In this document: in pieces, positions 1 through 32,257 of the stretch
How the letters are laid out: every line of letters starts with the position of its first letter
Position numbering within the stretch: position 1 is the stretch's first letter
Virus record (IMG/VR): IMGVR_UViG_3300037042_006844
Coordinates: 1-64,000 of that record
Reading direction: 5' to 3' (one strand)
DNA length: 64,000 bases
The notes under the pieces: generated by a model
Seen by the model: the letters and a program-made list of their open reading frames with translations, nothing else
What the model was told of the DNA's origin: nothing
Database searches by the model: none
Made by a program: the position numbers and the translations under genes

Positions 1-130
1 CTGGATGAACACCATCCAACAAATAATCTATACACGTTTGCGACGAGTGAATTGTGTGTGTTTTGCTGCAATGCTTTCGCAGCGATTCATATTTTTCAAA
101 TTTGACACCACATTGTTTACATATATACAT
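1..130 (-). CDS. 5' part of a C2H2 Zn-finger protein, probably another free-standing homing-endonuclease-type gene (runs off the window)
   Basis: Not in the ORF track. Manual translation from ATG at 130 gives MYICKQCGVKFEKYESLRKHCSKTHTIHSSQTCIDYLLDGVHP, open to base 1. It has a CxxC...HxxxxH finger and resembles the HIFNNTHPLCECGCG region of the 13780-15768 protein. GGGGAG SD lies 7 nt upstream. Confidence 0.7.
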   Translation of the reverse strand, partial: MYICKQCGVKFEKYESLRKHCSKTHTIHSSQTCIDYLLDGVHP

Positions 131-162
131 AAAAAAACTCCCCATACAATAAGTATAGGGAG
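131..162 (-). terminator. Rho-independent terminator after the tail tube gene
   Basis: 10-bp stem (138-147 with 153-162, one G-U pair on the minus strand) followed by T7 on the minus strand. Confidence 0.75.
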
Positions 163-179
163 GATTTTTGAAAGTGCAA
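152..179 (-). promoter_or_regulatory. sigma70-like promoter for the Zn-finger gene, overlapping the terminator
   Basis: Minus strand TTGCAC (179-174), 16-nt spacer, TATACT (157-152). Confidence 0.5.
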
Positions 180-216
180 CCTGATTTATGCTTTCTGGAG
201 CAATCAGGTCGATGCG

Positions 217-708
217 TCAATATTGCAAAATTGCATAATCTGGCTGAACCGTGAGATTGATTTTCAATGCTTCACCGTCGTTGCTCCAATCGAGCGAATT
301 GAATGAGGCTTCAGTAATGAACGATCCTTTGAGTGTCCATTCTTCGACCTTGTCGCCGACAGGACCGAGAACATTGATGGTCAAATCTTTCTTGTAGAAA
401 TCTTGATAGCCATCACGACCCGTCACAGATTCGTGATGCAGACGAACCCATTCCATGACTGCTTGTGCGCCAGATGGAACGATTGGATCATAAAGCTCCA
501 TCGTGATGGTTCCCCAAATGCTCTTGCCTTTGTAGAACGTTCTGATGTTGATGTGGTCTAATTCTTTGGCGGCCTGAGTAATTTTTGGGCGGTCCGTCTT
601 TTTGATTATGAAGGACGGCACACCGTCACAATACAAAACAAATCTGTTCTGCACCTTTGGCTCAAACGCCGTGTAAAAAATTTCTGATGGATTTAATAGT
701 TCTGCCAT
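217..708 (-). CDS. gp19: Tail tube protein (T4 gp19-like)
   Basis: 163 aa; FEPKVQNRF, RPKIT, WGTITMELYD, W-x-L-x-G-x-F and final DYA motifs typical of T4-like tube proteins; AAGGA SD. Confidence 0.9.
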   Translation of the reverse strand: MAELLNPSEIFYTAFEPKVQNRFVLYCDGVPSFIIKKTDRPKITQAAKELDHINIRTFYKGKSIWGTITMELYDPIVPSGAQAVMEWVRLHHESVTGRDGYQDFYKKDLTINVLGPVGDKVEEWTLKGSFITEASFNSLDWSNDGEALKINLTVQPDYAILQY

Positions 709-733
709 AATATTTGTCCTTTATTGTCCTAGA

Positions 734-741
734 TATAAATA
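734..741 (-). promoter_or_regulatory. Representative copy of the recurrent sense-strand TATTTAT(A/T) box (putative late promoter)
   Basis: The same box occurs upstream of minus-strand genes at 1942, 2567, 6529, 9852, 10069, 11535, 13734, 18907, 20409, 22964, 30559, 36296, 42515, 44954, 46153 and 61725. It occurs in the opposite orientation before the plus-strand genes, at 11565 and 18948. Confidence 0.75.
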
Positions 742-770
742 TGAATGGAAATCAATATTTGTTGTTTTTT

Positions 771-1934
771 TTATATTTTGTTGATATCCGCATCAATCAA
801 ATTATTAATGGTCGAACGTAATTTGCTGATATATCCACTTGCTCGCAGCAGTTTGAACACCAAATTCTCAGTGCTATATTCACCACCCGTGCTTAAACCT
901 GTTTCGCGCATATTAAATAAACGCTTAACCATGTCTTTGAGAGAATCAACACGATTCGTTTTGATAACAGCGGCGATCTCATCAGTAAATTGTTTGTATT
1001 TCTTTTTGATGGCATCTTTGTCGATTTGCACATCTTCGTGTTTTGGCTGTTTGACCCATTCATTATTGAGAATACTATATACAGCTTGGCTTCGATTTAC
1101 ATCGGCAATGTCTTGGATGTATATTTCGACCGGATGCTCATTGATGTGAATATCGTGATGCTCGTTCCACTTGTTTTTATAGCCATCCACAAGCTTTTTT
1201 ACCAGTTCCTTGTTTGGATCGATCTTGCTGAAATCGATCAAAACATGCAAATCGATATCGCTTGTTGGAGTCCAATTATAACCAGCAGTGCTACCAAGAA
1301 ACAAAACATCCTCGATTGGCGCGGTAAGTTCTGTATCTTTGTAGAAAGTAGTGGCAGTTTTTAGCAGCATATCCAGCATTTCTGGCTTGAGAGTGTTTCC
1401 TTCCCAAATCTCTGGATTAAGAATACTGTTGTATAGTCTGAATTTTTCTTTTACACCCAAAATCTCTTTGAGCTTGTTAATGGTATCAGTGGCACTGGTA
1501 TGTAACAGCCCAATGCCCCCAGCGGCTTTGAATTCATCTATTACGTCCTGTCTGTCATCTATCATGATGGCATCGGGTCCGGCGAACTTAGCCTTATCTT
1601 CCCTGTGAGAAACTAAATTAGGTTTGAAAGTTATACCGTGCTTTTTCAACCATGCTGTTTTTCCGACATTGCTTTCTGGATTGGATGAGTGACTCAAAAT
1701 TTCAGTTGGTAGCTCTTTGACAAAATTGTAAAGAACTTTTCCATCCCTCATCCAAGGCGCATCAGCATAAAAAGCAGGGCTGTTTTTGTGAACAAGCTCA
1801 TAGGTTTGTTTTTTACCATGCTCGGCTTCATATGCTGCTGGAGACCTTCCATCACTGTAATGTTCAAACTGTTTCTCCCAGTCAACTATGACTCCATCCA
1901 TGTCAAGATAGATTTTATACTTACTGTGTATCAT
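771..1934 (-). CDS. HAD-family 5'(3')-nucleotidase-like domain fused to a pol-beta-superfamily nucleotidyltransferase
   Basis: N-terminal YLDMDGV (HAD motif I), K..W and MIDDR (motif IV); C-terminal LGSTAGYNW..SDIDLH (GS + DxD) and VEIYIQD. Confidence 0.8.
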   Translation of the reverse strand: MIHSKYKIYLDMDGVIVDWEKQFEHYSDGRSPAAYEAEHGKKQTYELVHKNSPAFYADAPWMRDGKVLYNFVKELPTEILSHSSNPESNVGKTAWLKKHGITFKPNLVSHREDKAKFAGPDAIMIDDRQDVIDEFKAAGGIGLLHTSATDTINKLKEILGVKEKFRLYNSILNPEIWEGNTLKPEMLDMLLKTATTFYKDTELTAPIEDVLFLGSTAGYNWTPTSDIDLHVLIDFSKIDPNKELVKKLVDGYKNKWNEHHDIHINEHPVEIYIQDIADVNRSQAVYSILNNEWVKQPKHEDVQIDKDAIKKKYKQFTDEIAAVIKTNRVDSLKDMVKRLFNMRETGLSTGGEYSTENLVFKLLRASGYISKLRSTINNLIDADINKI

Positions 1935-2046
1935 CTGTTATAATAAATATATGCTACCTGCTTATTCTTCTAAGCCTAAGCTTATATTAGCTTCTTTAGT
2001 TCTAGTATTCATATTCTAAATAATTAACTAACTGAGCACTTCAAGC

Positions 2047-2250
2047 TCAATGCTTATAGCTTATGCTTTCTATACCTGGTCTGTCAAGATATAAGAAGTC
2101 CAAACCCACTGTTAAGTCTAATTTTATTTTGCCAGACTGGTATTTATAACGAAACAAGTCAAGAAACTCACATATTTCTTGACTTTCCCTATTTTCAGTT
2201 AAGGGTTCGTAATATGTGTTATCAGAATACTGCTCAAACCTGATGTTCAC
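2047..2250 (-). CDS. Small hypothetical protein
   Basis: 67-aa ORF (GTG start) preceded by a TACTTATT variant of the late box 4 nt upstream. Confidence 0.5.
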   Translation of the reverse strand: MNIRFEQYSDNTYYEPLTENRESQEICEFLDLFRYKYQSGKIKLDLTVGLDFLYLDRPGIESISYKH

Positions 2251-2268
2251 ATATAATAAGTATGAAGC

Positions 2269-2562
2269 TTATTTTGTGGTCGGCTTAAAAGTTCCATCTT
2301 TCAGACTCAACACACCGTCACCATATTTCTGACTTAATTGCTGCAACAAAGTATTTTCTTCAGTTTGGACTTTTTTCCATTCGTCAAAAATCTTGGTTCG
2401 CTCACTAGCTAAATCAGCTTTTTGTTGTTCCATTTGTTGTTCCAATTCAACTTTGGCAAGTTCCAGCTGTCCAAGTTCAAAAATCTTTTGTTGATACTTG
2501 GCTTGAAGTTGCGCAATTGCTTGCATTTCTTGTTCCGTGAATTTTGTAACGTTTTCGTTCAT
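2269..2562 (-). CDS. Small coiled-coil protein, possibly a fibre assembly chaperone
   Basis: Q/E-rich heptads, C-terminal KYGDGVLSLKDGTF; lies next to fibre genes; late box 4 nt upstream. Confidence 0.6.
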   Translation of the reverse strand: MNENVTKFTEQEMQAIAQLQAKYQQKIFELGQLELAKVELEQQMEQQKADLASERTKIFDEWKKVQTEENTLLQQLSQKYGDGVLSLKDGTFKPTTK

Positions 2563-2599
2563 ATGATATAAATACCGCAGGTTGCCCCGATCCGCATTT

Positions 2600-4033: not shown

Positions 4034-4046
4034 AATTCGTTATTTC

Positions 4047-6521: not shown

Positions 6522-6558
6522 ACTCTACAATAAATATGGAACACTCTGATTTCCCACA

Positions 6559-8034: not shown

Positions 8035-8037
8035 AGA

Positions 8038-8604: not shown

Positions 8605-8608
8605 GTTT

Positions 8609-9847: not shown

Positions 9848-9887
9848 TAAATATAAATATCGCTATGTTCGATATTAGTGCCAATTT

Positions 9888-10049
9888 CTATTCTATTGTT
9901 GGGTCGTTTTCGTCCAAATAGATAGTCGCCAATATTTTATAATCGGAAACGGGAGCCGTTTTAGGCGCAGTCTCCCGACGCAATTTTTCTTCTTTGAGCT
10001 TTTTGGCTCGGAGGACTTTTTGTAGAGTGGTCTTTACTTTCTGATTCAT
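9888..10049 (-). CDS. Small basic hypothetical protein (likely start MNQKV at 10049)
   Basis: ATG at 10049 lies 19 nt below a TATTTATA box. Confidence 0.45.
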   Translation of the reverse strand: MNQKVKTTLQKVLRAKKLKEEKLRRETAPKTAPVSDYKILATIYLDENDPTIE

Positions 10050-12570: not shown

Positions 12571-13344
12571 ATGGCAGAGTCCTATTGCGACACATCACTA
12601 ATTTATTTGGAGCCAATCAGCAAACCGATTGCCCGCAGCATGATCGAAAAAAACCACTATAGTCACAAGTGGTCTTGCTGCACCGTGGCTTACGGGGTTT
12701 TCTACAAAGAATACATCGAAAGCACATTTTTCGGTGGTTATCAGAGTAAACTAATCGGAGTATTGGTTTATGGAAATGCAGTGGGAAGATGCGCCAGCAA
12801 AAGCATCAGTCCTCTATTAGCCAACGATAATGTATTTGAACTCACCCGCTTGTGGGTCGCAGATGGCTATGGAAAAAACATAGAAAGTTATTGTATAGCT
12901 GAAAGCTTTCGGTTGTTAAACAAAGAATATCCCAAAATCAAATGCATATTGACCTATGCTGATAGCGAAGAAGGTCATCGTGGCATCATCTATCAAGCAT
13001 CTGGATTTATTTATCAAGGGGACAATTACGTCGATATTGCAATTATGCCGAACTACAGTGTAAGTTTGGACGGTCCTCCGAGCTACAAATGGATTCATAG
13101 TCGCAGTGTGTATAACCGATGGAAATCACACAATGTTGACAAGCTGAAAGAACGAATCGGCAAAACGTTTTGGCGCAAACGTGAAAGCGGAAAGCATCGC
13201 TATGTCAAATTCATTTGTGGCAAAATTGAAAACAAACGACTCAGAAAATCTTTGAAACACAAAGAATTGCCGTATCCAAAAGGTGCGATTTTCAAAGAAG
13301 TTGTCACTGAACACGTTGTGGACAGTTCACAGTCTTTCTTCTAA
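12571..13344 (+). CDS. Mom-like (GNAT-fold) DNA adenine modification protein
   Basis: KNHYSH, LIGVLVYG, FELTRLW, ILTYADSEEGHRGIIYQASGF, and K.RY motifs characteristic of phage Mom-like proteins. Confidence 0.8.
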   Translation: MAESYCDTSLIYLEPISKPIARSMIEKNHYSHKWSCCTVAYGVFYKEYIESTFFGGYQSKLIGVLVYGNAVGRCASKSISPLLANDNVFELTRLWVADGYGKNIESYCIAESFRLLNKEYPKIKCILTYADSEEGHRGIIYQASGFIYQGDNYVDIAIMPNYSVSLDGPPSYKWIHSRSVYNRWKSHNVDKLKERIGKTFWRKRESGKHRYVKFICGKIENKRLRKSLKHKELPYPKGAIFKEVVTEHVVDSSQSFF

Positions 13345-13350: not shown

Positions 13351-13728
13351 TTAATTTTTGTAAAACTTCAATGTTTTTACCACTTTATCCAGACCCAAAT
13401 TTTTGAAGTTCAAATCGTCTTTCTTTTTACCCTGAAAGCTTTCGTGGTGGATGCTTACATCAAACCTTTTCATATCTTTGTCAAGAGGAATCACTGTAGC
13501 AGAATAATATGACACGGTGTTACTGTTTGGCAATACCAGAAACATTCCGAATCCTTTATCATATTTTTTAGTCCACGCATCTTTTCCAGACTCGAAATAT
13601 TTTGTCTCAGACACGTTGACCCCTCTTACATCATCTTGTGATCGGCGCAGTTTGGAAATTATTGTTTGAATAAGAGTGGGTTCATCGATCACTTCTTTGA
13701 TCAGTTGTATCAATTCTGTTTTTGTCAT
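13351..13728 (-). CDS. Hypothetical protein
   Basis: 125-aa ORF with the late box 5 nt upstream; N-terminus ELIQLIKE. Confidence 0.6.
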   Translation of the reverse strand: MTKTELIQLIKEVIDEPTLIQTIISKLRRSQDDVRGVNVSETKYFESGKDAWTKKYDKGFGMFLVLPNSNTVSYYSATVIPLDKDMKRFDVSIHHESFQGKKKDDLNFKNLGLDKVVKTLKFYKN

Positions 13729-13742
13729 ATATTAATAAATAG

Positions 13743-13764
13743 AAAAACCCCAGCTGGGGTTTTT
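13743..13764. terminator. Perfect 22-bp palindrome (terminator-like), a near copy of the capsid terminator
   Basis: AAAAACCCCAGCTGGGGTTTTT read directly. Confidence 0.7.
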
Positions 13765-13779: not shown

Positions 13780-15768
13780 TTAAATTTCAACAATGGCCTC
13801 TCGTTTATTTGCAGAATTTTTATCAAAATGACTTGTGTTTGATACTATATACGAGTTTATATTGGTCCAATTCAGCCGTTCGCTTAATTCGCTGGACACA
13901 TTAATGTAACATTTCTTACCCGAATATTTTTCAATTGCGGCGATGAACGTATTTTTCCAATCATTAAACGATCCGTGCGCAGTGCTGTTGCTGTAAATCT
14001 CAAGATCGTAATACGGAATGCTAGTAAAAATCAAATCAAACCGACGATCTGTTGAAAACTCCTCAAATTTACAATTGTGAATTTCTACATTGGTTAAATT
14101 TGCATTTTTAATAAAAGTCTGCAATTCACCGAATGTTTCAACGTTTGGTTCACATCCGATATACGTGCCATTTGGATATTTACTCTTAAATCCCAATAAT
14201 CTGCCGCCAAATCCACAACACGGGTCCAATACCACAGGCGAGGCCGTGTCCCCCAAATATTTGTGATATATTGCGGCTGCTAATAGCGGCTTAAAAAATG
14301 AAACGGTTATTCTTCTGGCAGACAAACCCTGTATCAATTGGTGTAAACTAAAATCAAATATTTCGCCACTATTATTACAACCGATTCTGTATTTTATAAC
14401 ATCGTGCATGATAGATTCGTCCTCCCACGCAGTTTTCGGCGCAACGTTACCTTTATAACTCGCTCCCCAGTAAGAATGGAAATGATGCTTCAAATAATTA
14501 TTGCCGATTGAATAAATATTGTTTGAAAATTCATTGGATTGCGCATTGTAAATCGATGTATAATCATATTCTCTAATTTTGCGCATAACCAATTCTATGC
14601 TCTCATATAACGGGGGATATGGAAATTCCGGTTGGAAATTGCGAATGAATTTTTTAAGCAACCACAAAAATGACTCAACGTAAGGTTGACCTTTGTCGAT
14701 AATGCAATTTGAAAAATATTCTTTATTTATTACCACATCGTCATATCCTAATACCAAATGGTTAATTTTATTATAACATGCTATATTTTTGATCAAATCG
14801 GTCTCACTGCGCGAGTTCGTTATGAGTGCAGACAAATCACTTTCGCGAATTCTATAAATATTATCGATGGTATTATTTTTTTGGCGATCCGATATAACAC
14901 TAGATAGCAGCTTAAAATTCAAATTTTCAATATTTGTTGGATGCCAATATTCGCCATCGATTTCAATGCACATATTGTGATCCTGTAAATAAAAATCAAC
15001 AGACGCGGACCTATCACCACAATCAACTACGTATGGATGTTTATATTTAATATTAAGAGAATTTAATAATGATTCAAAACATAGTTCTGGTTCTGTATCA
15101 ATAGTATTTATGGCACATTTTCTATTAACTGCACTATCCGACATTTTTTTGACAGCAGTTCGTTTATGCGTTTTACCATACATCGGATTATTGATTCCTA
15201 TTGAATTGTGCCCGGTAATATAATCGATTCTATATGGGTAGTAGTTTAACAACTTAACCGTTTTACCACACCCACATTCACACAGTGGGTGTGTATTATT
15301 AAATATGTGTTGTTTGACATAGGTCGGTTTGTCCAATTTGTGTATTTTTTTAATGTGCCAGCCCAGCAAATTACCGGAAGCAAATTGTTCTCCACAGATC
15401 ACACACGAATGTTTATTTTCTGTAGACATTAACCTATTTTTATATTCAATATTTTTAAGTTTGGATGAGCGATATTCACCACAGCGAATAACATAATCAT
15501 CTGGCGATATGCTATGTGTGTCCCTCAGATGAACAAAAAATCCAACCGAAGAATACTTGTTATTGCACAATTTACACTCAATTTTATTGACAGACCTAAT
15601 ATGCGTTTTACTTTTTTGTTTTCTAAACTCGCCGTATTTACATGCGTATTTATCGGATGTCAGTGCATGTTTCCATTTCAAATGACTTGAAAAGCTGTAT
15701 AATGAAATTTTTTCGCCGCAAATATCACAAGATTTCAACGACGGTTTATTAACAATAGCGCGACTCAT
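13780..15768 (-). CDS. Zn-finger/NUMOD3/DUF559-like endonuclease fused to a C-terminal SAM-dependent DNA amino-methyltransferase (likely start MSRAIV at 15768)
   Basis: Three CxxC..H..H fingers, CECGCG, GINNPMYGKTH (NUMOD3-like), TEPE...VDFY...IEIDGEYWH nuclease core, VLDPCCGFGGRLLG (motif I), GCEPN, DLIFTSIPYYDLEIY (motif IV-like). Confidence 0.8.
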   Translation of the reverse strand: MSRAIVNKPSLKSCDICGEKISLYSFSSHLKWKHALTSDKYACKYGEFRKQKSKTHIRSVNKIECKLCNNKYSSVGFFVHLRDTHSISPDDYVIRCGEYRSSKLKNIEYKNRLMSTENKHSCVICGEQFASGNLLGWHIKKIHKLDKPTYVKQHIFNNTHPLCECGCGKTVKLLNYYPYRIDYITGHNSIGINNPMYGKTHKRTAVKKMSDSAVNRKCAINTIDTEPELCFESLLNSLNIKYKHPYVVDCGDRSASVDFYLQDHNMCIEIDGEYWHPTNIENLNFKLLSSVISDRQKNNTIDNIYRIRESDLSALITNSRSETDLIKNIACYNKINHLVLGYDDVVINKEYFSNCIIDKGQPYVESFLWLLKKFIRNFQPEFPYPPLYESIELVMRKIREYDYTSIYNAQSNEFSNNIYSIGNNYLKHHFHSYWGASYKGNVAPKTAWEDESIMHDVIKYRIGCNNSGEIFDFSLHQLIQGLSARRITVSFFKPLLAAAIYHKYLGDTASPVVLDPCCGFGGRLLGFKSKYPNGTYIGCEPNVETFGELQTFIKNANLTNVEIHNCKFEEFSTDRRFDLIFTSIPYYDLEIYSNSTAHGSFNDWKNTFIAAIEKYSGKKCYINVSSELSERLNWTNINSYIVSNTSHFDKNSANKREAIVEI

Positions 15769-15775: not shown

Positions 15776-15804
15776 ACTATACACGATACGCTAAGAAAAT
15801 GCAA
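15776..15804 (-). promoter_or_regulatory. sigma70-like promoter of the endonuclease-methyltransferase gene
   Basis: TTGCAT (15804-15799), 17-nt spacer, TATAGT (15781-15776); ATG follows 7 nt later. Confidence 0.6.
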
Positions 15805-15831: not shown

Positions 15832-15869
15832 AAAAAAAAAAGAAAACCCCAGCGAAAGCTGGGGTTTTC
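15832..15869 (-). terminator. Rho-independent terminator after the major capsid gene
   Basis: Perfect 12-bp stem (15842-53 with 15858-69), 4-nt loop, T10 tract on the minus strand. Confidence 0.9.
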
Positions 15870-15894: not shown

Positions 15895-17634
15895 TTATAC
15901 TTGATCAAGGTCGGCAACCAGAACTTTTCCATAAAATTCGGGTCTGACTACCTTCTTAGCGTAGCGGGTCATCACACCACGGCGTGGCGTGAAATTCACT
16001 GGATCATAGACCAGTGGAGTTTGGATAAGCGGAATGTATGGGGCATACACTGCGCCGGTTTCGAGGAAGTTATTTCCACGGAAACCAATCAAGATGACGT
16101 TATCGGTCATATATGGGTTCTTGTAGACTTGGAAGCGACTTGCGAAGCTACCAACTCGGGCAACGCCCATTGCGAACTTGGCTTGATCACCATCGGTGTT
16201 GACCACATATCCTGGGATACTTTCTAGAATAGTTGCCACATCTGGAGAACAAACGAGGAAGTTAGCACCACCACGGAGAGTCAATTTGTGGATCGTGTTG
16301 GATACCTTTTGAATCTTGTTGCCAAGAGTCTGGAACCAAGTTGATTTCACATATGCTGTGCGGTTAGCGGCTGTGTTCTGATTACGTGTGAATGAAGCAA
16401 CGTTGGTCGTTGCGTTCACAGTCTTGGTGAACTCAGTTCCGATTGCAGCACTCCATGCTTCGGTGGTGACACCGGTCACGGATTCGTTTAACATGTCGAG
16501 GATTTCGAGGTCGATTTCCATTGACACATATTCGCTCAACAGTGCAGTAAGTTCTGCTTCTGCATCGATGCTGTGGTAAGCATTCAAATCTTGAGCAAGT
16601 TCTGGAGTCCAGATTGCTTTCAATTTGCGGGTCTTAGCCACGATAGGTTCGCTCTTGAGGTCAAGGTTGACTTCAGGAATACCAAGGTCAGTTCCAATTG
16701 CTTGGGTTGCGGTTGCGGCAGCTTTACCAGAACCTTCACCGGCAGTTTTACCATCTTCGAAATCACCACGCAAATTGTCCGTGGGTTGAATTGTATAAAT
16801 CAATCTTGGAGTTGCTGCCGGGTATATTGTGGCAGATGATTGGCTGACGAACATGTTAATTTGATAGTATGGGTTTGCCAAGCTACCAGTATTAACTGCT
16901 GTTGCATAAGTGTTCAACACAGTGTATGCTGTGTTGTTTGCTTGTGTAAGGCCGAATGAACGAACTGCGTTCAAATCAACATTCCAAAGATATCCGTTTG
17001 CAGCAACGGTTCCAGTTTGGGTGTTGTCATCAAGATTCAATGTTACCTTGAAAATACCTTTAACTTTACTAGTAGATGCAACAACTGATGAGCTAAATGC
17101 GGTATCAAATTGGAGATCGTTCCAACTTGCAGATGCAATTGTAGCTGATGTGCATGTAGAACTGGTCACAAATCTCTCTGAGTATGCATAACGACCTTGA
17201 CCGTAAAGACCGTTAACTGCTGAGTCGGTTGAACCGAGCTTCTTTTGAGTTCCACCGAACAAGCTTTCGCCGCTGGTGTGACCCAATTGGTTGTTGCCAT
17301 ACTTGAAGTCCAAGTAGAAAATCAGACCGCTTGGGAGATTCATCGGTTGAACACTGACGAATTCTTTAGCAGCGATTTCTGCGAACACACGGCGAACGAG
17401 TGGGAGAGCTACGCCAGCCCATTGTTCACTGTTTGCGCTTGTTCCGGTTGAGGTTGCTTCGTCAAGCAATTGTTTTGCTTGATTTTCCAAGAGGATCGAC
17501 ATGTGCGCCTTTTCGGTGCCACGGGTGCCTTCGAGAAGACCCGTTCGTTCCCACTTGGTTTGTAGACCACGGGTTTCAGCCATCAGCTTCGCCTGTGGAT
17601 TCATGTTTCCTGTCAATAGACTTTTTACATCCAT
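15895..17634 (-). CDS. gp23: Major capsid protein (gp23-like)
   Basis: LPLVRR, VQPMNLPSGLIFYL, AKTRKLKAIWTPELAQDLNAYHSIDAEAEL, YAPYIPL, GVMTRYA hallmark motifs. Confidence 0.97.
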   Translation of the reverse strand: MDVKSLLTGNMNPQAKLMAETRGLQTKWERTGLLEGTRGTEKAHMSILLENQAKQLLDEATSTGTSANSEQWAGVALPLVRRVFAEIAAKEFVSVQPMNLPSGLIFYLDFKYGNNQLGHTSGESLFGGTQKKLGSTDSAVNGLYGQGRYAYSERFVTSSTCTSATIASASWNDLQFDTAFSSSVVASTSKVKGIFKVTLNLDDNTQTGTVAANGYLWNVDLNAVRSFGLTQANNTAYTVLNTYATAVNTGSLANPYYQINMFVSQSSATIYPAATPRLIYTIQPTDNLRGDFEDGKTAGEGSGKAAATATQAIGTDLGIPEVNLDLKSEPIVAKTRKLKAIWTPELAQDLNAYHSIDAEAELTALLSEYVSMEIDLEILDMLNESVTGVTTEAWSAAIGTEFTKTVNATTNVASFTRNQNTAANRTAYVKSTWFQTLGNKIQKVSNTIHKLTLRGGANFLVCSPDVATILESIPGYVVNTDGDQAKFAMGVARVGSFASRFQVYKNPYMTDNVILIGFRGNNFLETGAVYAPYIPLIQTPLVYDPVNFTPRRGVMTRYAKKVVRPEFYGKVLVADLDQV

Positions 17635-21028: not shown

Positions 21029-21031
21029 GTG

Positions 21032-22949: not shown

Positions 22950-23003
22950 ATAGTTCTATTAAATATAAATATGTATCACTTTACAAAATCATCGCGAATT
23001 GTG

Positions 23004-26804: not shown

Positions 26805-26828
26805 AATGTGCTATCTTATATATAAGTA

Positions 26829-28037
26829 TTATAACAACCAAGTTAGTGACTCTTTTTTGCCAGTATGCGCTGCGCCGGTGTCGAATTTCCAAGTTTCTTG
26901 AGGAGATTGGATGATTTTGGTCTGACTTGCGGGTCCTGGAGTAGTGTTTACCACCTTTTTAATGCCACTCAGCATGGTGCGTGTGTATAGCATTTGCTCG
27001 GTTCGTATTTTTAATGCGGTGTCTCGCACCCAAAGACCAATACCCAACGACATCACAAGATCGTCGTTATAGCCTTTCATTGCTTCAGCTTTAGCACCGT
27101 TCCAAATAAACACATTAAGCTCTTCGTAAAGACGGACACTACGAATTACAATTTGTTGTTCACGGAAAAACGCCTCCATTTTGTTGATAATGAGTTGGCG
27201 GTTGATGTTTGTCGTTGTGAATCCGGGAACTGCTTTTTTCTCAGTATTATTGAGTTTATTGCTATAAGTTCGCTCTATATCGACAACTTTTAGATCAGAT
27301 GAACTGTAAAAAAGATTTTGGTATTCTCTGTCTATAATTTGCTGCAACGATGCCCAACCAATGTTATTGTTTTCAACGACCAACAAAGCATTGTTATATT
27401 CAGTTGCCACTGTTACCAACAAATTTCCAAAATCTTTGGTTGTAATCTGCCCTTTATATTCCGCAACTTGCTCCAAAGTTTCAACGTCAAATACATGAAA
27501 CGCGCTAAAATCCGCTCCGTCGCCGCGAGCGCAGTCGGCAGATATCATATAGTTTTTGCTGTAATCAGGACGTTCCCATATCCACAAATCCTGTGTGGCA
27601 CCACGTTTTTCAATGGGGTCTTTGATATAAGTTTTTTTGTAAAACTCCAAGACATCGACTGAGACGACTTGATTTCCAGATGTGCTGAAATCACAATTAT
27701 GCGATACAATTCCATCTACATTGAATATATTGCCGTTGCCGACATTTACAATATCATATAAATCGATTGCGGCATCGACTTTCGTAATGGATATAACTTC
27801 GATATCCGCGCCATCAACTCCTGTTATTTTTGAGCCAATTTTTATATCGCACGAACGAATTTCTATTGAATTAAAAATAAAAGGATGATTATCAGAACAC
27901 TTTATCGTCTTGCCATTACTCAAAAATATGACATAATGACAATCTTTTTTTAGCTTTCTAATACCCAAAAAATTTTGATATCCAGAAGGAGTGAGAATCT
28001 GGAATCTTGTGTTAAGCTTAACGTCAGGGATGTTCAT
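26829..28037 (-). CDS. gp17: Terminase large subunit C-terminal (nuclease) half with an N-terminal split-intein C-fragment
   Basis: IntC ending IVSHN followed by CDFSTSG; ISADCARGDGADFS, VVENNNIG, YNDDLVMS RNase-H-like terminase motifs. Confidence 0.92.
   Translation of the reverse strand: MNIPDVKLNTRFQILTPSGYQNFLGIRKLKKDCHYVIFLSNGKTIKCSDNHPFIFNSIEIRSCDIKIGSKITGVDGADIEVISITKVDAAIDLYDIVNVGNGNIFNVDGIVSHNCDFSTSGNQVVSVDVLEFYKKTYIKDPIEKRGATQDLWIWERPDYSKNYMISADCARGDGADFSAFHVFDVETLEQVAEYKGQITTKDFGNLLVTVATEYNNALLVVENNNIGWASLQQIIDREYQNLFYSSSDLKVVDIERTYSNKLNNTEKKAVPGFTTTNINRQLIINKMEAFFREQQIVIRSVRLYEELNVFIWNGAKAEAMKGYNDDLVMSLGIGLWVRDTALKIRTEQMLYTRTMLSGIKKVVNTTPGPASQTKIIQSPQETWKFDTGAAHTGKKESLTWLL
27696..28037 (-). 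mobile_element. Split intein C-fragment (114 aa)
   Basis: MNIPDVKLNTRFQILTPSG...CSDNHPF (block B)...LYDIVN (block F)...VSHN (block G). Confidence 0.88.
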
Positions 28038-28048
28038 AATGTATATGA

Positions 28049-28882
28049 TCAAATTAGATGAGAATATAAATTTTCTAATGAAATCTCATATTCGATACCA
28101 GTATTTTTATCTAGTATTTTAACTGTCGAATCCCCCCATAGACAATCGCATTCTTGAGCCGCCCCTTTTATGCCAGACAATTCGGTCTGTTGATCGCGCC
28201 ATGTTTGATCACGATCTGGATGCAAATTCCAAGGCAGACGAATGGTATTGAACTTGTTTTCACCGGCTTCGGCTGCCACCCACGTTTTATGGAAAAAATT
28301 ACCAACACCGTTTGGCGTTGATAATATGATCGCACGACCGCCGGTTGAAAGAGTGTATTGTGATGACAGCCAAATTTCTTCGATGTTGTCAATAAACGCG
28401 GCTTCGTCAATAATCAGCACAGAGAGTGCTGCTGAACGACCTGCGGTTCCCGCACTGGAAACAGCTTTGATTTGCGACCCGTTTTTGAGACGCAAGCTCA
28501 AACGGTTATCTTCCACGCACTGAACTTTCAACCACGCCGGAAGATTGTCATTTGCGAAACGAACTTTTGTGACAATTTCTTTGGCAGTTTCCTGAGTAAT
28601 GCTGATGATTAGAATATTTTTGTCGGTAAAAAACGTCATCAACCACAAACTATATGCTGCCGTTAGAGTGGAAATACCCATCTGACGACTTTTGAGAATG
28701 ATGTTGAGACTGTTTTCTACCAAATCTGTAAGAGCCTCTTCCTGAAATGGATACAAATCAAAATTACAGGTGCCGCGCACTGGATGTTGGATTTTCACAT
28801 ACTTCTTCATGAAGTATATGGGGTCTTCCAAACATCGTTTATACTCGGCTTTTATTAGCTCTCTGTAATTTTGCTGACTCAT
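28049..28882 (-). CDS. gp17: Terminase large subunit N-terminal (ATPase) half ending in a short split-intein N-fragment
   Basis: LYPFQ, LKSRQMGIS (Walker A), LIIDEAAF (Walker B), STPNG; then QECD followed by CLWGDST. Confidence 0.93.
   Translation of the reverse strand: MSQQNYRELIKAEYKRCLEDPIYFMKKYVKIQHPVRGTCNFDLYPFQEEALTDLVENSLNIILKSRQMGISTLTAAYSLWLMTFFTDKNILIISITQETAKEIVTKVRFANDNLPAWLKVQCVEDNRLSLRLKNGSQIKAVSSAGTAGRSAALSVLIIDEAAFIDNIEEIWLSSQYTLSTGGRAIILSTPNGVGNFFHKTWVAAEAGENKFNTIRLPWNLHPDRDQTWRDQQTELSGIKGAAQECDCLWGDSTVKILDKNTGIEYEISLENLYSHLI
28052..28144 (-). mobile_element. Split intein N-fragment (31 aa)
   Basis: CLWGDSTVKILDKNTGIEYEISLENLYSHLI-stop; block A only. Confidence 0.88.
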
Positions 28883-29489: not shown

Positions 29490-29501
29490 TATGTATTTGT
29501 T

Positions 29502-30554
29502 TTATTTACCAAAACCACTTTGTAGACCTTTAATGATGAACCCCCCAGTTATTTTATATGGTTTGCTATGAATGCTTGGATCGCGCACCACAATGCCTTC
29601 ATGCTTCTCCAAATCCCCAATTTCACTGGTGGCATTTTTAAGGATTTCATCGCCCAATTTGACCGTTGCGATGTAAACGATTGTATCATTAATGATCTTT
29701 TTGATATCTTCACCTTGAAAATCGGCACTGATATTTTTGCTGTCTGAAGCTTTGACAAACTGCTCACGGGTAATCAATGGAGTTTGAATGCTAATACCTT
29801 TCAGCCAATCTTTGAGAGATTTGGTAACGGGATTGCCGTCTGGATATAACGTAACTTTTTCACCCAATGGTCTGGTTAGATTTGGATTGGATTTGAACGT
29901 TGTGCCAATGCTGCCCAAAACTTTGAATCCGTATTTTTTAGCGACCGCATTCAATTTGTTGATGTAACTTTGCATTGCATCGTGGTCATAGTTGATTTCG
30001 GTTGCCACACGGCTTTTTACTTGCCCATCCTTGCCAATATTTTTTGGTTTGATTTCTTTCAATCCGTGAATTGCCAGAAAATTTCCGATGTCGCCATACC
30101 CAACTACATTGGTTTGCCCTTCCACATATTCGATGTTCAACAAAATGTTAGGATTGTCGAGCATTCCCAATTTTTTCAATTCCGATTTGGTGCTGGGAAT
30201 TGCTGCGTCGAATATATTAAGCACTTTGGCACCAATTTTAACGAATCCGTGTTCTTGACCAGAGGCGGGATCAGTGGGCCAGCGTTTCGCCAAATCGTCG
30301 GGTCGCATTCCTTGAATATCGAACGGTTTGGCACTACCACGGTCCATAACGAATTGTCCTTTTGACAAACGAATACTGGCGTTTACACCGTCAATTTTGA
30401 CACTTCCTGCGCCTTTTTTAAGTGTTTCAATGGTTTTGACAAATACGTCCACCAATTGTTTTCCGTTGGCGGCAAAATCGAACGGGTGGTCCATATGCCC
30501 TCCCGCGCCGCCTTCGGTCAATACTTCATAGAGTAGATTATTTAACTTGATCAT
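29502..30554 (-). CDS. Ligase-like (covalent nucleotidyltransferase superfamily) protein
   Basis: VKIDGVN (motif I KxDG), LNIEYV (III), EGIVVR (IV), YKITG (V); N-terminal EGGAGGHMDHP. Confidence 0.6.
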   Translation of the reverse strand: MIKLNNLLYEVLTEGGAGGHMDHPFDFAANGKQLVDVFVKTIETLKKGAGSVKIDGVNASIRLSKGQFVMDRGSAKPFDIQGMRPDDLAKRWPTDPASGQEHGFVKIGAKVLNIFDAAIPSTKSELKKLGMLDNPNILLNIEYVEGQTNVVGYGDIGNFLAIHGLKEIKPKNIGKDGQVKSRVATEINYDHDAMQSYINKLNAVAKKYGFKVLGSIGTTFKSNPNLTRPLGEKVTLYPDGNPVTKSLKDWLKGISIQTPLITREQFVKASDSKNISADFQGEDIKKIINDTIVYIATVKLGDEILKNATSEIGDLEKHEGIVVRDPSIHSKPYKITGGFIIKGLQSGFGK

Positions 30555-30577
30555 TAACTATAAATATATGACGAAAC

Positions 30578-30606
30578 AAAAAAACCCCGCCTTTTTAGTG
30601 GCGGGG
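30578..30606 (-). terminator. Terminator after the endonuclease-GNAT gene
   Basis: CCCCGCC-8 nt-GGCGGGG stem with a T-tract on the minus strand. Confidence 0.8.
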
Positions 30607-30634
30607 CTGTTTAGGCTATCTCAGTGTTGTCAAT

Positions 30635-32143
30635 TCACATAGGTCGAGTCCACTCAAACTTAAAATGCCCGCAATCCCATATTCTGTCATATCCATTTAT
30701 TTGCATATTTTTCCATTCGCTCAAATTTGTGTCAAATTGTTTGAGTTTTTTATTGAGCTTATGCTTTTGAAAGTGCGATCTGCCAATTGGAACACAATTA
30801 TTTGTATGGAAATAATGATACCCAGCTGGTGTATGTGACACAAATCTCATGCCTATATTTTTATACACGGACCCAGTAAATAATCTTTTATCGGAGTATG
30901 TTACTACTGAATTAACATCGTAATTTTTTACAAAGTGCGCAAACAATTTAGATGCACCACCCACAATATGCGTATTGAGAGTATTGCAATAACGAGATAA
31001 TTCATATTGATATTTTTTATCGTATCTAGACTTGACAAACGTCATAATGGACAATAGAACGTCATCTTTATACAACCCGATTCTTATTGAAGATGTGTCA
31101 TCCCCCTGAATATGATTTTTGATTAAAAACTCCGTTTTATCAACGTTTGAAACTTCTTTAATTACGCATTTCCGAGCATGAAATTTCTCAGATTTTTTAA
31201 TTTTATTTAGCAATATACTTTTGACGATATCTTGTTTGCATTTCCACTCCCAATCCCAAATGTGCATCAATTCAATATTTTTTTCCGCACATCTATTTGT
31301 TTTCGACAAATGGTATTTTTTATTCTTTTTACCAGCCAACTCGCCATGCCAATATATGCCGTCGCATTCTATAGCCATATTTAACTGCGGCAGTAAAATA
31401 TCGATCTCCTCTCCGCCCAATATTGTTCTATCGTGTGGCTTTGTAACAACGTTATATTCATGCAAAAAACTCAAAATTTCTGTTTCTATGGAAGACGCGA
31501 ATCTGTTGTGTGGATTGCAATTCAAGCATCGAGGAATGTTCCCAGAATACAGATTATCTTCAAAATTATTGCCGCATTTACAACAAGTAAATTTGTATAG
31601 GGTATCATAAGAAGAACCGGCGTATTGTTCGCGGGTAAATAACGGGGTAACGATATTATGCAGCCTGCCCCCATCAAATATATCCGCCACGGTCTCGCTC
31701 GCAATTCTGGCGCGATGTTTTTCTTTAACAGCGTCCAATTGAGAAACGTTTGTAATATTATTATCGACTAAATATTGTTTATATTTTTTTGATTCGAATC
31801 CAATTTGCTTTGATTCGAGTCGTTTCTGTGTGCTTTTGAGTGTATTCGGAGATACATTCATGCCATATTTTTCATTATTCGTTTTTAGCATTTTATCGCG
31901 ATTATTGAAATGCTCGTCACCATATTTTTCCAATTTCGTGCGTTTTGCTTTTTCTAAATTGTTGTAATTTTCATCGCCGTATTTTTCTTTCAACGTAGAT
32001 TTCATGTTCAAAACCATTTTATCATACGCCCCATTTTCTCGTTTTTGGCGTATTTTGTCTTTGACATGTGGTAATTGCGATGGATGATACACACCATATT
32101 TTTTGAAAAAAGCGTCTCTTATTTTTTTACCTCGTTCGGTCAT
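30635..32143 (-). CDS. Hef-like free-standing endonuclease (DUF559-like core) fused to a C-terminal Mom-like GNAT domain (ATG at 32143)
   Basis: KYG repeats, CCKCG..CLNC Zn ribbon, SSIETE...EIDILLP...IECDGIYWHG nuclease core; NHIQG, ELSRY, VVTYSD, GSVYKNIGM; AAGGAG SD. Confidence 0.8.
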   Translation of the reverse strand: MTERGKKIRDAFFKKYGVYHPSQLPHVKDKIRQKRENGAYDKMVLNMKSTLKEKYGDENYNNLEKAKRTKLEKYGDEHFNNRDKMLKTNNEKYGMNVSPNTLKSTQKRLESKQIGFESKKYKQYLVDNNITNVSQLDAVKEKHRARIASETVADIFDGGRLHNIVTPLFTREQYAGSSYDTLYKFTCCKCGNNFEDNLYSGNIPRCLNCNPHNRFASSIETEILSFLHEYNVVTKPHDRTILGGEEIDILLPQLNMAIECDGIYWHGELAGKKNKKYHLSKTNRCAEKNIELMHIWDWEWKCKQDIVKSILLNKIKKSEKFHARKCVIKEVSNVDKTEFLIKNHIQGDDTSSIRIGLYKDDVLLSIMTFVKSRYDKKYQYELSRYCNTLNTHIVGGASKLFAHFVKNYDVNSVVTYSDKRLFTGSVYKNIGMRFVSHTPAGYHYFHTNNCVPIGRSHFQKHKLNKKLKQFDTNLSEWKNMQINGYDRIWDCGHFKFEWTRPM

Positions 32144-32170
32144 ATACAATACTCCTTATCTAATAGATAC

Positions 32171-32198
32171 ATATTAACACACATGTCAAAAATGTCAA
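32171..32198 (-). promoter_or_regulatory. sigma70-type promoter of the endonuclease-GNAT gene
   Basis: TTGACA (32198-93), 16-nt spacer, TGt-TAATAT (32176-71); a second TTGACA lies at 32189-84. Confidence 0.65.
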
Positions 32199-32208
32199 AA
32201 ATATAAAC

Positions 32209-32238
32209 AAAAAAGGAGAGCAATTTCTTGCTCTCCTT
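32209..32238 (-). terminator. Terminator after the tail sheath gene
   Basis: 11-bp stem AAGGAGAGCAA/TTGCTCTCCTT with a T-tract on the minus strand. Confidence 0.9.
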
Positions 32239-32257
32239 GTGAATGAGGTTTTATTAG

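What the first reader, a model, noticed from the sequence alone, without database searches (positions are those of the whole stretch)
1..32240. Capsid, sheath and tube genes are each followed by a terminator and an independently promoted Zn-finger/endonuclease-type gene
Seen: the capsid terminator (15832-69) is followed by a sigma70-like promoter and the nuclease-MTase. The sheath terminator (32209-38) is followed by a sigma70 promoter and the nuclease-GNAT. The tube terminator (131-162) overlaps a sigma70-like promoter and is followed by an unannotated C2H2 ORF starting at 130. Neighbouring virion genes use the TATTTAT box instead. Inference: a family of moron-like or homing cassettes targets the 3' ends of the most conserved structural genes, is insulated from late read-through and is expressed early by host RNA polymerase.
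Basis: partly seen in the sequence, partly recalled or inferred. Interest (0 to 1): 0.68.

Follow-up and report, generated by a model that had tools for sequence, protein, structure and literature searches.

The report
Homing endonuclease genes behind virion genes
Three selfish, mobile nuclease genes sit just behind the tube, capsid and sheath genes of a large T4-like freshwater phage, each with its own stop and start signals; this is a clear case of a phenomenon already known from phage T4.

Summary
Strong intrinsic terminators follow the tube (162-131), capsid (15869-15832) and sheath (32238-32209) genes. Each is followed by a nuclease gene.

- A: C2H2 finger plus HNH, 271 aa once the circular contig is closed.
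- B: three zinc fingers, NUMOD3, a Vsr-like nuclease and an amino-methyltransferase.
- C: hef-like, with DUF7487 repeats, a Vsr-like nuclease and a Mom-like GNAT fold.

The TATTTAT box is a real, enriched motif.

All three are free-standing homing-endonuclease-type cassettes. Most related phages lack them at these sites. A lake-water phage 99.4% identical in the flank has an empty A site. Other relatives carry different endonuclease genes (GIY-YIG, other hef-like) at the same sites. hef-like genes form clades by insertion site, and their divergence is decoupled from that of the flanking genes.

The native terminators of the tube and sheath genes lie downstream of A and C. These cassettes therefore brought their own upstream hairpins. 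A's hairpin also buries its ribosome-binding site, as in T4 mobE and I-TevI.

Promoter-like elements are conserved within each family, but early expression is untested. The kind is known: T4 seg/mob/hef genes and REase-Mom fusions in jumbo phages.

The parts
217..708 (-). gp19-like tail tube gene, 163 aa
   Evidence: phrog_4542 1.3e-24; Pfam Phage_T4_gp19, weak
131..162 (-). Hairpin plus U7 carried by cassette A. It acts as a terminator for tube transcripts, and its 3' arm holds A's Shine-Dalgarno GGAG.
   Evidence: -18.3 kcal/mol, z -4.7. An equivalent hairpin with different stem sequences is present in 5 homologous loci. The native tube terminator lies after A.
152..179 (-). Promoter-like element of A: TTGCAC, 16 nt, TATACT. 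The -10 lies in the 5' arm and loop of the hairpin.
   Evidence: Read. The same layout occurs in L173, L191, L214, L225 and L243. Function is inferred.
1..130 (-). First 43 codons of cassette A (C2H2 finger). The gene continues at G000:C1:302663..301851, giving 271 aa with a CxCGCG zinc ribbon and a C-terminal HNH.
   Evidence: The junction is seen in assemblies of two samples. Relative L173 has the uninterrupted homolog, 81% identical.
15895..17634 (-). gp23-like major capsid protein gene
   Evidence: Pfam Gp23 1.2e-73
15832..15869 (-). Native capsid-gene terminator, bidirectional
   Evidence: The same terminator is present at empty sites, for example L009.
15776..15804 (-). Promoter-like element of B: TTGCAT, 17 nt, TATAGT, then 7 nt to the ATG (a leaderless layout)
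   Evidence: L257 has the same layout, TTGAAC-17-TATAGT-7-ATG.
13780..15768 (-). Cassette B, 662 aa: three C2H2-type fingers, CxCGCG ribbon and NUMOD3, a Vsr-like PD-(D/E)xK nuclease, a helical domain, and a class I amino-methyltransferase
13743..13764 (-). Terminator after B. Its stem nearly duplicates the capsid terminator.
13351..13728 (-). 125-aa ORF of unknown function with a TATTTAT box. It is also absent from empty-site relatives.
   Evidence: no family hit
12571..13344 (+). Mom homolog (DNA adenine methylcarbamoylase family). It is the conserved convergent neighbour of the capsid gene.
   Evidence: phrog_1384 1.9e-44; PDB 8bv8 5.4e-13; synteny
32258..36244 (-). Tail sheath gene, 1328 aa
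   Evidence: Pfam Phage_sheath_1 and 1C; phrog_23 2.3e-63
32209..32238 (-). Terminator upstream of C, cassette-borne in this genome
   Evidence: The native sheath terminator is the one after C.
32171..32198 (-). Promoter-like element of C: TTGACA, 16 nt, TAATAT with TG. It is followed by the palindrome TATCTA-T-TAGATA (32169-32157) and SD AGGAG (32156-32152).
   Evidence: The 5' region is nearly identical in L089, L103 and L105, although the proteins are only 71-73% identical.
30635..32143 (-). Cassette C, 502 aa, hef-like: DUF7487 repeats, zinc ribbon, Vsr-like nuclease, and a C-terminal GNAT fold closest to Mu Mom
   Evidence: phrog_3339 1.8e-103
30583..30608 (-). Native sheath-gene terminator, now downstream of C. 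It is followed by the TATTTAT box of gene 29502-30554.
   Evidence: It is homologous to the post-sheath terminator of empty-site relatives L085 and L090.

Best explanation
A, B and C are three free-standing homing endonuclease genes. Each is a self-contained transcription unit inserted in the short spacer just downstream of a highly conserved, highly expressed late gene: tube, major capsid and sheath.

Shown:
- Each encodes a nuclease of a type used by homing endonucleases, joined to modular DNA-binding domains. A is HNH. B and C are Vsr-like PD-(D/E)xK with conserved catalytic residues.
- Each is missing from the same site in most related phages.
- The same sites hold unrelated endonuclease genes in other relatives.
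- hef-like genes group by insertion site rather than by phage lineage.

Inferred, by analogy with intronless homing of T4 seg, mob and hef genes:
- In a mixed infection the enzyme cuts the cassette-free allele in or next to the conserved neighbouring gene.
- Recombinational repair then copies the cassette and its flanks into the cut genome.

Regulation (anatomy shown, function inferred):
- Each cassette sits between terminators. For A and C the upstream one was brought by the cassette, and the native terminator of the virion gene now follows the cassette.
- Late read-through from the virion gene is therefore mostly stopped.
- In A, any read-through RNA has its ribosome-binding site paired inside the hairpin. 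A promoter whose -10 lies within the hairpin would produce a shorter, translatable RNA. This is the arrangement described for T4 I-TevI, segB and Aeh1 mobE.

The C-terminal methyltransferase of B and the Mom-like GNAT of C are probably active DNA-modifying domains. Their role is open: self-protection of the resident target, or target recognition.
For: Identity of the cassettes.
- C matches phrog_3339 'homing endonuclease' at 1.8e-103 over its full length.
- C is 32-35% identical over 93-98% of its length to Hef or 'homing endonuclease' genes of Campylobacter phages CP220, CPt10 and IBB_35 and Klebsiella phages RaK2 and Muenster.
- Hef is reported to have endonuclease activity, with cleavage sites near its own locus (PMC3322345).
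- A matches HNH PHROGs and shows the CxxC...HxHH...CxxCH motif.
- B matches phrog_559, Pfam Vsr 2.2e-5 and NUMOD3.
- The nuclease motif D...ExDG..(W/Y/F)H recurs in both the B and the C families: 61 of 119 C-family and 30 of 46 B-family proteins of 400 aa or more match the strict pattern.

Empty and alternatively occupied sites.
- Capsid site: at least 21 of 80 relatives (MCP 74-85% identical) go straight from the capsid terminator to the convergent Mom gene. 15 carry a GIY-YIG gene there, 3 a hef-like gene and 1 a B homolog.
- Sheath site: 6 of 80 carry a C ortholog, 2 a 595-aa hef-like gene and 4 another Vsr-like gene. The rest carry none.
- Tube site: the closest relatives, L165-L168 and L174, lack A. 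6 carry A homologs and 3 carry hef-like genes.
- Lake-water contigs with 5 differences in 813 nt join the tube stop codon to 2 nt past A's stop. This is an empty site, and it sizes cassette A at about 903 nt.

Mobility.
- The hef-like tree splits into clades by site: sheath-downstream 100, capsid-downstream 100, protease-downstream 99, tube-downstream 97 and tube-upstream 99 (SH-aLRT). It needs 10 label changes against 21.1 in shuffles, reached in 0 of 200.
- C identity is decoupled from the flanks. L089 against L103: C 83%, sheath 67%. Window against L089: C 73%, sheath 79%.
- B-family proteins P0127 and P0154, and the B-like gene of LR756508, also lie just downstream of Gp23 genes.

Signals.

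Literature.
- T4 segD lies between genes 23 and 24, with terminators on both sides.
- Hairpins that bury the ribosome-binding site and contain an internal promoter are described for I-TevI, I-TevII, I-TevIII, segB and Aeh1 mobE (PMC2988022).
- Homing endonuclease genes cluster near terminase, ribonucleotide reductase and capsid genes (PMC10448857).
Against: - No cleavage site, homing event or transcript has been observed for these three genes. All function is inferred from sequence and comparison.
- My related loci were fetched by anchoring on capsid, sheath and tube genes, so they cannot show that such genes are preferred over others.
- Within this genome, only 4 of about 7 endonuclease-like genes follow a clearly conserved core gene.
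- Promoter matches for A and B are weak (8 of 12), and such matches are at chance level in the window.
- The MAFFT-based consensus fold of A's leader was poor. The hairpin argument rests on separate folds of each sequence.
- The site tree is a quick tree, not the finished careful search.
- Iyer et al. 2021 read REase-Mom fusions in jumbo phages as restriction-modification-like weapons rather than homing genes (PMC7824862).
Confidence: 0.8

Rival explanations
1. B and C are mainly single-chain restriction-modification-like weapons. The methyltransferase or Mom-like domain marks the phage's own DNA, and the nuclease destroys unmodified host DNA or DNA of superinfecting phages. Their position behind virion genes is incidental. 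This reading can coexist with mobility.
For: - Both carry a DNA-modification-type domain after the same kind of nuclease, with conserved cofactor and catalytic motifs: DPxxGxG and S-x-P-Y are invariant in 26 B-type sequences, and GG-SK is nearly invariant in 30 C-type sequences.
- The GNAT fold has Mu Mom as the top Foldseek hit (E 1e-6).
- B's methyltransferase part resembles N4-cytosine DNA methylases of Vibrio phages (2e-8).
- Iyer et al. 2021 propose exactly this reading for REase-Mom fusions in jumbo phages.
- C has an early-type promoter.
Against: - A defence role does not explain why clades track insertion sites, why presence is sporadic among close relatives, or why divergence is decoupled from the flanks.
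- B-type genes recur specifically behind gp23 in unrelated contigs.
- The DNA-binding modules (NUMOD3, zinc fingers, DUF7487 repeats) are those found in homing endonucleases.
- A has no modification domain, yet behaves in the same way.
Confidence: 0.15
2. The three genes are old, vertically inherited accessory genes (morons) that many lineages have lost. The terminator-promoter layout simply reflects ordinary operon boundaries.
For: - Terminators after the capsid, sheath and tube genes exist with or without a cassette.
- C orthologs at the sheath site occur in two sheath lineages.
Against: - A flank 99.4% identical has an empty A site.
- Different endonuclease families occupy the same spacer in different relatives.
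- C divergence does not track flank divergence.
- Cassette-borne terminators are inserted between the stop codon and the native terminator.
Confidence: 0.03
3. The apparent cassette A is an assembly artefact. The contig start merely overlaps a paralogous gene elsewhere in the genome, and the ORF at 1-130 is a fragment.
For: - The overlap is exactly 127 nt, a typical assembler word length.
- The other copy is preceded by a TnpB gene and lacks an ATG.
Against: - Contigs from two independent samples join C1:302663 directly to window 128 onward. In the likely source sample this form has depth 25.6, against 8.1 for the TnpB branch.
- Relatives place the genes of the contig's far end right after the tube gene.
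- L173 has the uninterrupted tube, hairpin and A homolog.
Confidence: 0.02

Closest known systems
Free-standing homing endonuclease genes of T4 and relatives (seg, mob; intronless homing), especially segD between genes 23 and 24, and the hairpin-regulated mobE and segB
   Same: - Intergenic insertion next to conserved essential genes, with sporadic distribution among relatives.
- Terminators flank the gene behind the capsid gene.
- A hairpin buries the ribosome-binding site and contains an internal promoter (PMC2988022).
   Different: - B and C use a Vsr-like nuclease rather than GIY-YIG or HNH.
- The cassettes carry sigma70-like promoter elements, whereas the review notes no early promoters for T4 endonuclease genes.
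- B and C carry extra modification-type domains.
- No activity data exist here.
Hef (homing endonuclease-like function) of T4-related phage U5, and hef-like genes of Campylobacter phages CP220, CPt10 and IBB_35 and Klebsiella phage RaK2
   Same: C aligns over its full length, 32-35% identical, GNAT-fold end included. It belongs to the same PHROG.
   Different: The link to U5 Hef is by chain of annotation; I did not align U5 Hef itself. C sits behind the sheath gene rather than in the nrd region.
REase-fold nuclease fused to a Mom-family GNAT in group 2 jumbo phages (Iyer et al. 2021, PMC7824862)
   Same: The domain pair is the same as in C, and this genome is also of jumbo-phage size (303,564 bp). 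The phage also encodes a stand-alone Mom homolog.
   Different: That paper reads the fusions as restriction-modification-like. The evidence here shows that they behave as site-specific mobile cassettes.
I-Bth0305I and the EDxHD family of Vsr-like homing endonucleases
   Same: The nuclease belongs to the Vsr/DUF559 branch of the PD-(D/E)xK superfamily. A Klebsiella phage homolog of C is annotated 'EDxHD'.
   Different: I-Bth0305I is intron-encoded and has no modification domain. I did not align it to B or C.
Type IIG/IIL single-chain restriction-modification enzymes such as MmeI
   Same: Like B, they combine a PD-(D/E)xK nuclease and an amino-methyltransferase in one polypeptide.
   Different: - In B, the DNA-binding part is a zinc-finger and NUMOD3 array at the N-terminus.
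- B-type genes are found behind phage gp23 genes and are sporadic.
- No homology beyond the shared folds was tested.
Homing endonuclease islands around essential genes in ICP1 and other phages (Barth et al. 2023, PMC10448857)
   Same: Endonuclease genes are enriched next to terminase, ribonucleotide reductase and capsid genes.
   Different: The nuclease families differ there (T5orf172, IPA-HNH).

Membership tests
Free-standing homing endonuclease gene | Encodes a nuclease domain of a family used by homing endonucleases, with catalytic residues intact | tested here: met
   A: HNH motif and HNH PHROGs. B and C: Vsr-like PD-(D/E)xK, with the D...ExDG..WH core recurring in both families.
Free-standing homing endonuclease gene | Present or absent at the same locus among close relatives (empty sites exist) | tested here: met
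   near-isogenic empty A site
Free-standing homing endonuclease gene | Gene history differs from that of the flanking genes (lateral spread) | tested here: met
   For C only: pairwise identities and clades by insertion site (quick tree). Not tested for A or B.
Free-standing homing endonuclease gene | The enzyme cleaves the cassette-free allele at a specific site near the insertion point | not testable with these tools
   Needs purified protein and substrates
Free-standing homing endonuclease gene | Over-transmission of the gene and flanking markers in mixed infections | not testable with these tools
   The phage is uncultured (an IMG/VR contig from a sediment metagenome).
hef-like family (phrog_3339) | Full-length similarity to annotated Hef proteins | tested here: met
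   phrog_3339 1.8e-103 over residues 10-499; tblastn to Hef-annotated genes, 93-98% coverage
GNAT superfamily, Mom family | GNAT fold | tested here: met
   Model pLDDT 91. VIA Z 12-13 to many GNATs, with Mom at Z 12.9, rmsd 2.3 over 132 residues.
GNAT superfamily, Mom family | Specific sequence kinship to Mom rather than to GNATs in general | tested here: inconclusive
   Mom is the top Foldseek hit (E 1e-6), and there is a shared local motif (T-Y-S/A-D ... G-x-V/I-Y). However, hhalign against the phage's own Mom homolog gives probability 2.6%, and the profile does not find 8bv8 by sequence.
Class I SAM-dependent amino-methyltransferase (DNA N6A/N4C type) | Rossmann fold with motif I (DPxxGxG) and motif IV ((D/N/S)-P-P-(Y/F)-like) | tested here: met
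   Invariant D186, P187, G190 and T253, S254, P256, Y257 in 26 sequences. Fold matches to METTL5, Trm11 and others. Pfam N6_Mtase 0.0064.
Class I SAM-dependent amino-methyltransferase (DNA N6A/N4C type) | DNA, rather than RNA, protein or a small molecule, is the substrate | tested here: inconclusive
   Distant hits to proteins with PF01555 and to N4-cytosine DNA methylases of Vibrio phages (2e-8). The top fold hits are small-molecule and RNA methyltransferases.
Intrinsic (rho-independent) terminator | GC-rich hairpin followed by a U-run, placed after a stop codon | tested here: met
   Termination itself has not been measured.
Ribosome-binding-site-sequestering hairpin with internal promoter (T4 I-TevI and mobE type) | The SD lies in the 3' arm of a stable hairpin just upstream of the start codon, and a promoter -10 lies within the hairpin | tested here: met
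   Six A-family loci have hairpins of -16.7 to -28.1 kcal/mol (z -4.3 to -8.5). Stem sequences differ, GGAG or GAGG always lies in the 3' arm, and a TTGnnn and TAnnnT pair is positioned so that the -10 falls in the 5' arm or loop. Start sites have not been mapped.
Sigma70-type early promoter | Match to TTGACA-N16-18-TATAAT beyond chance | tested here: inconclusive
   C scores 10 of 12; A and B score 8 of 12. The window-wide count equals chance. Genome-wide, matches of 10 of 12 or better lie upstream of 37 ORFs against roughly 10 expected. The elements are conserved in homologs.

The most novel reading that the evidence does not exclude
B and C are 'homing restriction-modification' elements. 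Each polypeptide pairs a site-specific Vsr-like nuclease with a DNA-modifying domain: an amino-methyltransferase in B and a Mom-like acyltransferase in C. That domain marks the enzyme's own target in the resident genome. A free-standing homing gene would thus gain immunity without needing a target-site mutation in an essential virion gene. Two different modification chemistries at the same position after the same nuclease, in lineages tied to particular insertion sites, would then reflect convergent solutions to one problem.
Probability: 0.2. Interest if true: 0.7.

Novelty: new member of a known kind. Interest (0 to 1): 0.4.

Why it matters
The locus is a clean natural example of how selfish nuclease genes colonise the spacers behind the most conserved phage genes. 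It shows the empty site, the occupied site and alternatively occupied sites side by side, and it shows cassettes that bring their own terminator and promoter so as not to disturb late gene expression.

It also bears on two published readings of the same protein type. One calls it Hef, a homing endonuclease. The other calls it a REase-Mom fusion that works like a restriction-modification system. Here these proteins behave as site-specific mobile elements, and there is a parallel methyltransferase-bearing lineage that is found behind gp23 in every context examined here.

If the modification domains do protect the resident target, that would be a new immunity mechanism for homing endonucleases. 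It would also provide compact enzymes that both cut and mark long DNA sites.

For annotation, the result warns that 'moron-like' genes behind capsid, sheath and tube genes in uncultured T4-like phages are often mobile endonuclease genes.

Tried and rejected
- Megablast of the capsid and sheath regions against GenBank phages found nothing. The closest named phages are distant: Microcystis phage Mel-JY01 at 51% and Flavobacterium phage immuto at 59% over part of the MCP. Their synteny was too remote to define empty sites.
- The MAFFT and RNAalifold consensus of A's leader gave a poor, mis-registered alignment (-2.8 kcal/mol). I used separate folds of each sequence instead.
- hhalign of C's GNAT profile against the phage's Mom homolog gave probability 2.6%. 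A profile search of PDB sequences did not find Mom. Specific Mom kinship is therefore left open.
- NCBIfam gave nothing useful for A or C.
- Exact-pattern scans of IMG/VR for near-isogenic empty B and C sites found none. This says little, because a single mismatch defeats the pattern.
- A look-up of the exact tube protein returned only the source contig and one short Logan contig.
- Rfam found no RNA family in the window, so the split terminase is not explained by a recognised group I intron.
- I first read A's -10 as TACTTA with an 18-nt spacer. Recounting gives TATACT with a 16-nt spacer.
- I considered that the contig-end copy of A was a second paralog. The read evidence favours a minority variant that carries an insertion sequence.

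Full report
**What the window is.** The window is bases 1-64000 of a 303,564-bp IMG/VR virus contig, classed as linear and 89% complete. Nearly all genes in 1-64000 lie on the minus strand. Family scans identify three virion genes:
- a gp19-like tail tube gene (217-708);
- a gp23-like major capsid gene (15895-17634; Pfam Gp23 1.2e-73);
- a 1328-aa sheath gene (32258-36244).

Other genes in the window include a prohead protease, portal, terminase and a head-tail adaptor. No GenBank phage is close at the DNA level. By capsid protein, the nearest named phages are Microcystis phage Mel-JY01 (51%) and Flavobacterium phage immuto (59% over part). Public runs that hold the sequence are sediment and lake-water metagenomes.

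**The observation.** Each is followed by a nuclease gene.
- Cassette C (30635-32143, 502 aa) matches phrog_3339 'homing endonuclease' at 1.8e-103 over its whole length.
- Cassette B (13780-15768, 662 aa) has weak but consistent profile hits to C2H2-type fingers, NUMOD3, Vsr and methyltransferase families.
- The ORF starting at 130 encodes a classical C2H2 finger.

The TATTTAT box is real. It is the most enriched word upstream of ORFs in the genome, present before 64 of 381 ORFs against about 8 expected.

The promoter part is weaker. Only C reaches the scan's threshold (TTGACA-16-TAATAT). A and B score 8 of 12, and sigma70-like matches in the window occur at chance frequency.

**Closing the circle and completing cassette A.**
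- Window 1-127 is identical to C1:302537-302663, and the match stops exactly there.
- Reading on from 302663 gives a 271-aa protein. It has the C2H2 finger, a CxCGCG zinc ribbon and a C-terminal HNH motif with HNH PHROG hits.
- In the closest relatives, the tube gene is followed by orthologs of the genes at the contig's far end: 300980-301774, 300124-300930 and 297187-299859.
- Relative L173 has an uninterrupted tube gene, hairpin and A homolog, 81% identical.
- Contigs from two samples join 302663 directly to window 128 onward. In the likely source sample this form has depth 25.6.
- The last 901 bases of the contig belong to a minority branch of depth 8.1. There, a TnpB-bearing insertion sequence sits between A's ATG and its second codon.

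**Empty and alternatively occupied sites.** I fetched 80 IMG/VR loci each for the capsid, the sheath C-terminus and the tube. I then mapped their ORFs onto this genome.
- Capsid site. At least 21 relatives (MCP 74-85% identical) run from the capsid stop through the same terminator straight into the convergent Mom-like gene. They have neither B nor the 125-aa ORF. 15 carry a GIY-YIG endonuclease gene there, 3 a hef-like gene, and 1 (L022) a B homolog.
- Sheath site. 6 relatives carry a C ortholog (71-73% identical), 2 a 595-aa hef-like gene, and 4 another Vsr-like gene. The rest carry none.
- Tube site. The closest relatives lack A. 6 loci carry A homologs and 3 carry hef-like genes.
- Lake-water contigs with 5 differences in 813 nt join the tube stop codon, through one base, to the position 2 nt past A's stop. 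This near-isogenic empty site sizes cassette A at about 903 nt.

**Where the terminators come from.** The post-capsid terminator is native, because empty sites have it. B is followed by a near-duplicate of that stem.

For the sheath and tube genes, the sequence homologous to the empty-site terminator lies downstream of C (30608-30583) and downstream of A. The hairpins at 32238-32213 and 162-138 therefore belong to the cassettes in this genome. In other C-bearing relatives the layout differs: L089 has a terminator on both sides, and L105 has one only upstream. In this genome, each cassette is thus a unit of terminator, promoter-like element, ORF and terminator. The TATTTAT box of the next virion gene follows it.

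**Regulatory anatomy.**
- C's 5' region is almost unchanged in L089, L103 and L105, although the proteins are only 71-73% identical. It comprises TTGAC/A, TAATAT, a 13-nt palindrome, AGGAG and the ATG.
- B's layout, TTGnnn-17-TATAGT-7 nt-ATG, recurs in L257. It resembles many early-type promoters of this genome that end 6-9 nt before a start codon.
- All six A-family loci have a strong hairpin (-16.7 to -28.1 kcal/mol; z -4.3 to -8.5). Stem sequences differ, but the 3' arm always contains the SD, followed by a U-run and the ATG. A -35-like and -10-like pair is placed so that the -10 falls inside the hairpin.

This matches the arrangement described for T4 I-TevI, I-TevII, I-TevIII, segB and Aeh1 mobE. 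In those genes, read-through RNA is untranslatable and the internally started RNA is translatable (PMC2988022). That review also notes that T4 endonuclease genes have no early promoters. Early expression here would therefore be a difference, but it is untested, because no RNA run holds the phage.

**What the proteins are.**
- A and B share the finger and ribbon DNA-binding module (A residues 3-91 against B residues 133-217).
- B and C share a Vsr/DUF559-type PD-(D/E)xK core.
- C's last 200 residues fold with pLDDT 91 into a GNAT domain. Mu Mom is the best Foldseek hit (E 1e-6) and ties with other GNATs by VIA (Z 12.9). Sequence-level kinship to Mom is not established.
- B's last 330 residues fold with pLDDT 89 into a helical domain plus a class I methyltransferase. 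Motifs DPxxGxG and S-x-P-Y are invariant, and there are distant links to N4/N6 DNA methylases.
- C has more than 2600 relatives. It is homologous over its full length to genes annotated Hef or homing endonuclease in Campylobacter and Klebsiella jumbo phages. Hef is reported to be an active endonuclease that cuts near its own locus (PMC3322345).
- REase-Mom fusions in jumbo phages have been described and interpreted as restriction-modification-like (PMC7824862).
- B's architecture has about 75 metagenomic relatives and one uncultured phage record. In every context I examined, it lies just downstream of a gp23 gene (with 13).

**Evidence of mobility.** A tree of 39 hef-like proteins from these loci splits into well-supported clades by insertion site. 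It needs 10 label changes against 21.1 in shuffles, reached in 0 of 200 (this is the quick tree, as the careful search did not finish). C identity does not track flank identity. L089 against L103: C 83%, sheath 67%. Window against L089: C 73%, sheath 79%.

**Scope.** The genome holds about seven endonuclease-like genes besides two TnpB genes. A fourth, 283805-284716, follows the UvsX-like recombinase gene. Two HNH genes follow a PstS-like gene and a methyltransferase gene. The preference is thus for conserved core genes in general. This agrees with published surveys (PMC10448857) and is not specific to structural genes. My related loci were all anchored on virion genes, so they cannot measure that preference.

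**Verdict.** The homing interpretation is well supported by comparative evidence. The 'single family', 'structural genes only' and 'early expression' parts are not established. The phenomenon belongs to a known kind. The most interesting open point is what the methyltransferase and Mom-like domains do in these mobile nucleases.

Noticed in passing
window 26829-28882 (-): The large terminase is encoded in two ORFs joined by an atypically split intein. ORF1 (28049-28882) ends with a 31-residue N-intein starting CLWGDSTV. ORF2 (26829-28052) begins with an approximately 118-residue C-intein ending VSHN, followed by CDFSTSG. Relatives L085 and L101 have the uninterrupted junction QECD|CDFSTSG, while L121 and L116 are also split. 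From memory, this resembles the AceL-TerL and GOS-TerL split inteins.
   Followed up: partly
G000:C1:302665-303564 (-) and 187733-189521 (-): There are two IS607-like elements (TnpB with a Cas12f-like TNB domain, 5e-18). Copy 2 has a serine-recombinase transposase (phrog_6620, 2.2e-56) and ends 1 nt before a thyA-like ORF. Copy 1 is a minority variant (depth 8.1 against 25.6) inserted exactly between the ATG and codon 2 of cassette A, so one mobile element disrupts another. Both copies end in GTAAC and abut TAT.
   Followed up: partly
whole genome; for example window 30560-30566, 13736-13742, 740-746: The TATTTAT box usually starts only 12-15 nt before the start codon. Many TTGACA-type promoters end 6-9 nt before an ATG. 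This suggests widespread leaderless or near-leaderless mRNAs in this phage. TATTTATA is the reverse complement of the T4 late box TATAAATA.
   Followed up: partly
window 12571-13344 (+): A stand-alone Mom homolog (PDB 8bv8, 5.4e-13) is the conserved convergent neighbour of the capsid gene across relatives. The phage DNA is therefore probably adenine-modified.
   Followed up: partly
window 30554-32258, compared with L085-L164: Most relatives have a roughly 257-aa gene between the sheath gene and the ortholog of 29502-30554. It has no homolog anywhere in this genome, and L089 lacks it too. Both genomes carry C at that place.
   Followed up: no
window 23004-26804 (-): The portal ORF is 1266 aa, but portal profiles match only residues about 844-1117. 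The long N-terminal part is unexplained and could be an extra domain or another intervening element.
   Followed up: no
L183, L187-L200, L203-L212, L220-L222 (loci): About 20 relatives carry a hef-like gene on the opposite strand immediately upstream of the tube gene. These genes form their own clade (99 support). In this genome that position is occupied by gene 771-1934.
   Followed up: partly
window 32157-32169 (-): A perfect 13-nt palindrome (TATCTA-T-TAGATA) lies between C's -10 box and its SD. It is conserved in C-bearing relatives whose proteins are only 71-73% identical. It could be an operator for autorepression, as shown for I-TevI.
   Followed up: no
window 771-1934 (-): This 387-aa protein appears to be a fusion. 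Its N-terminal part resembles a 5'-3' deoxyribonucleotidase (phrog_2643) and its C-terminal part matches phrog_36119. Several relatives encode the two parts as separate ORFs (for example L189, L204, L206).
   Followed up: no
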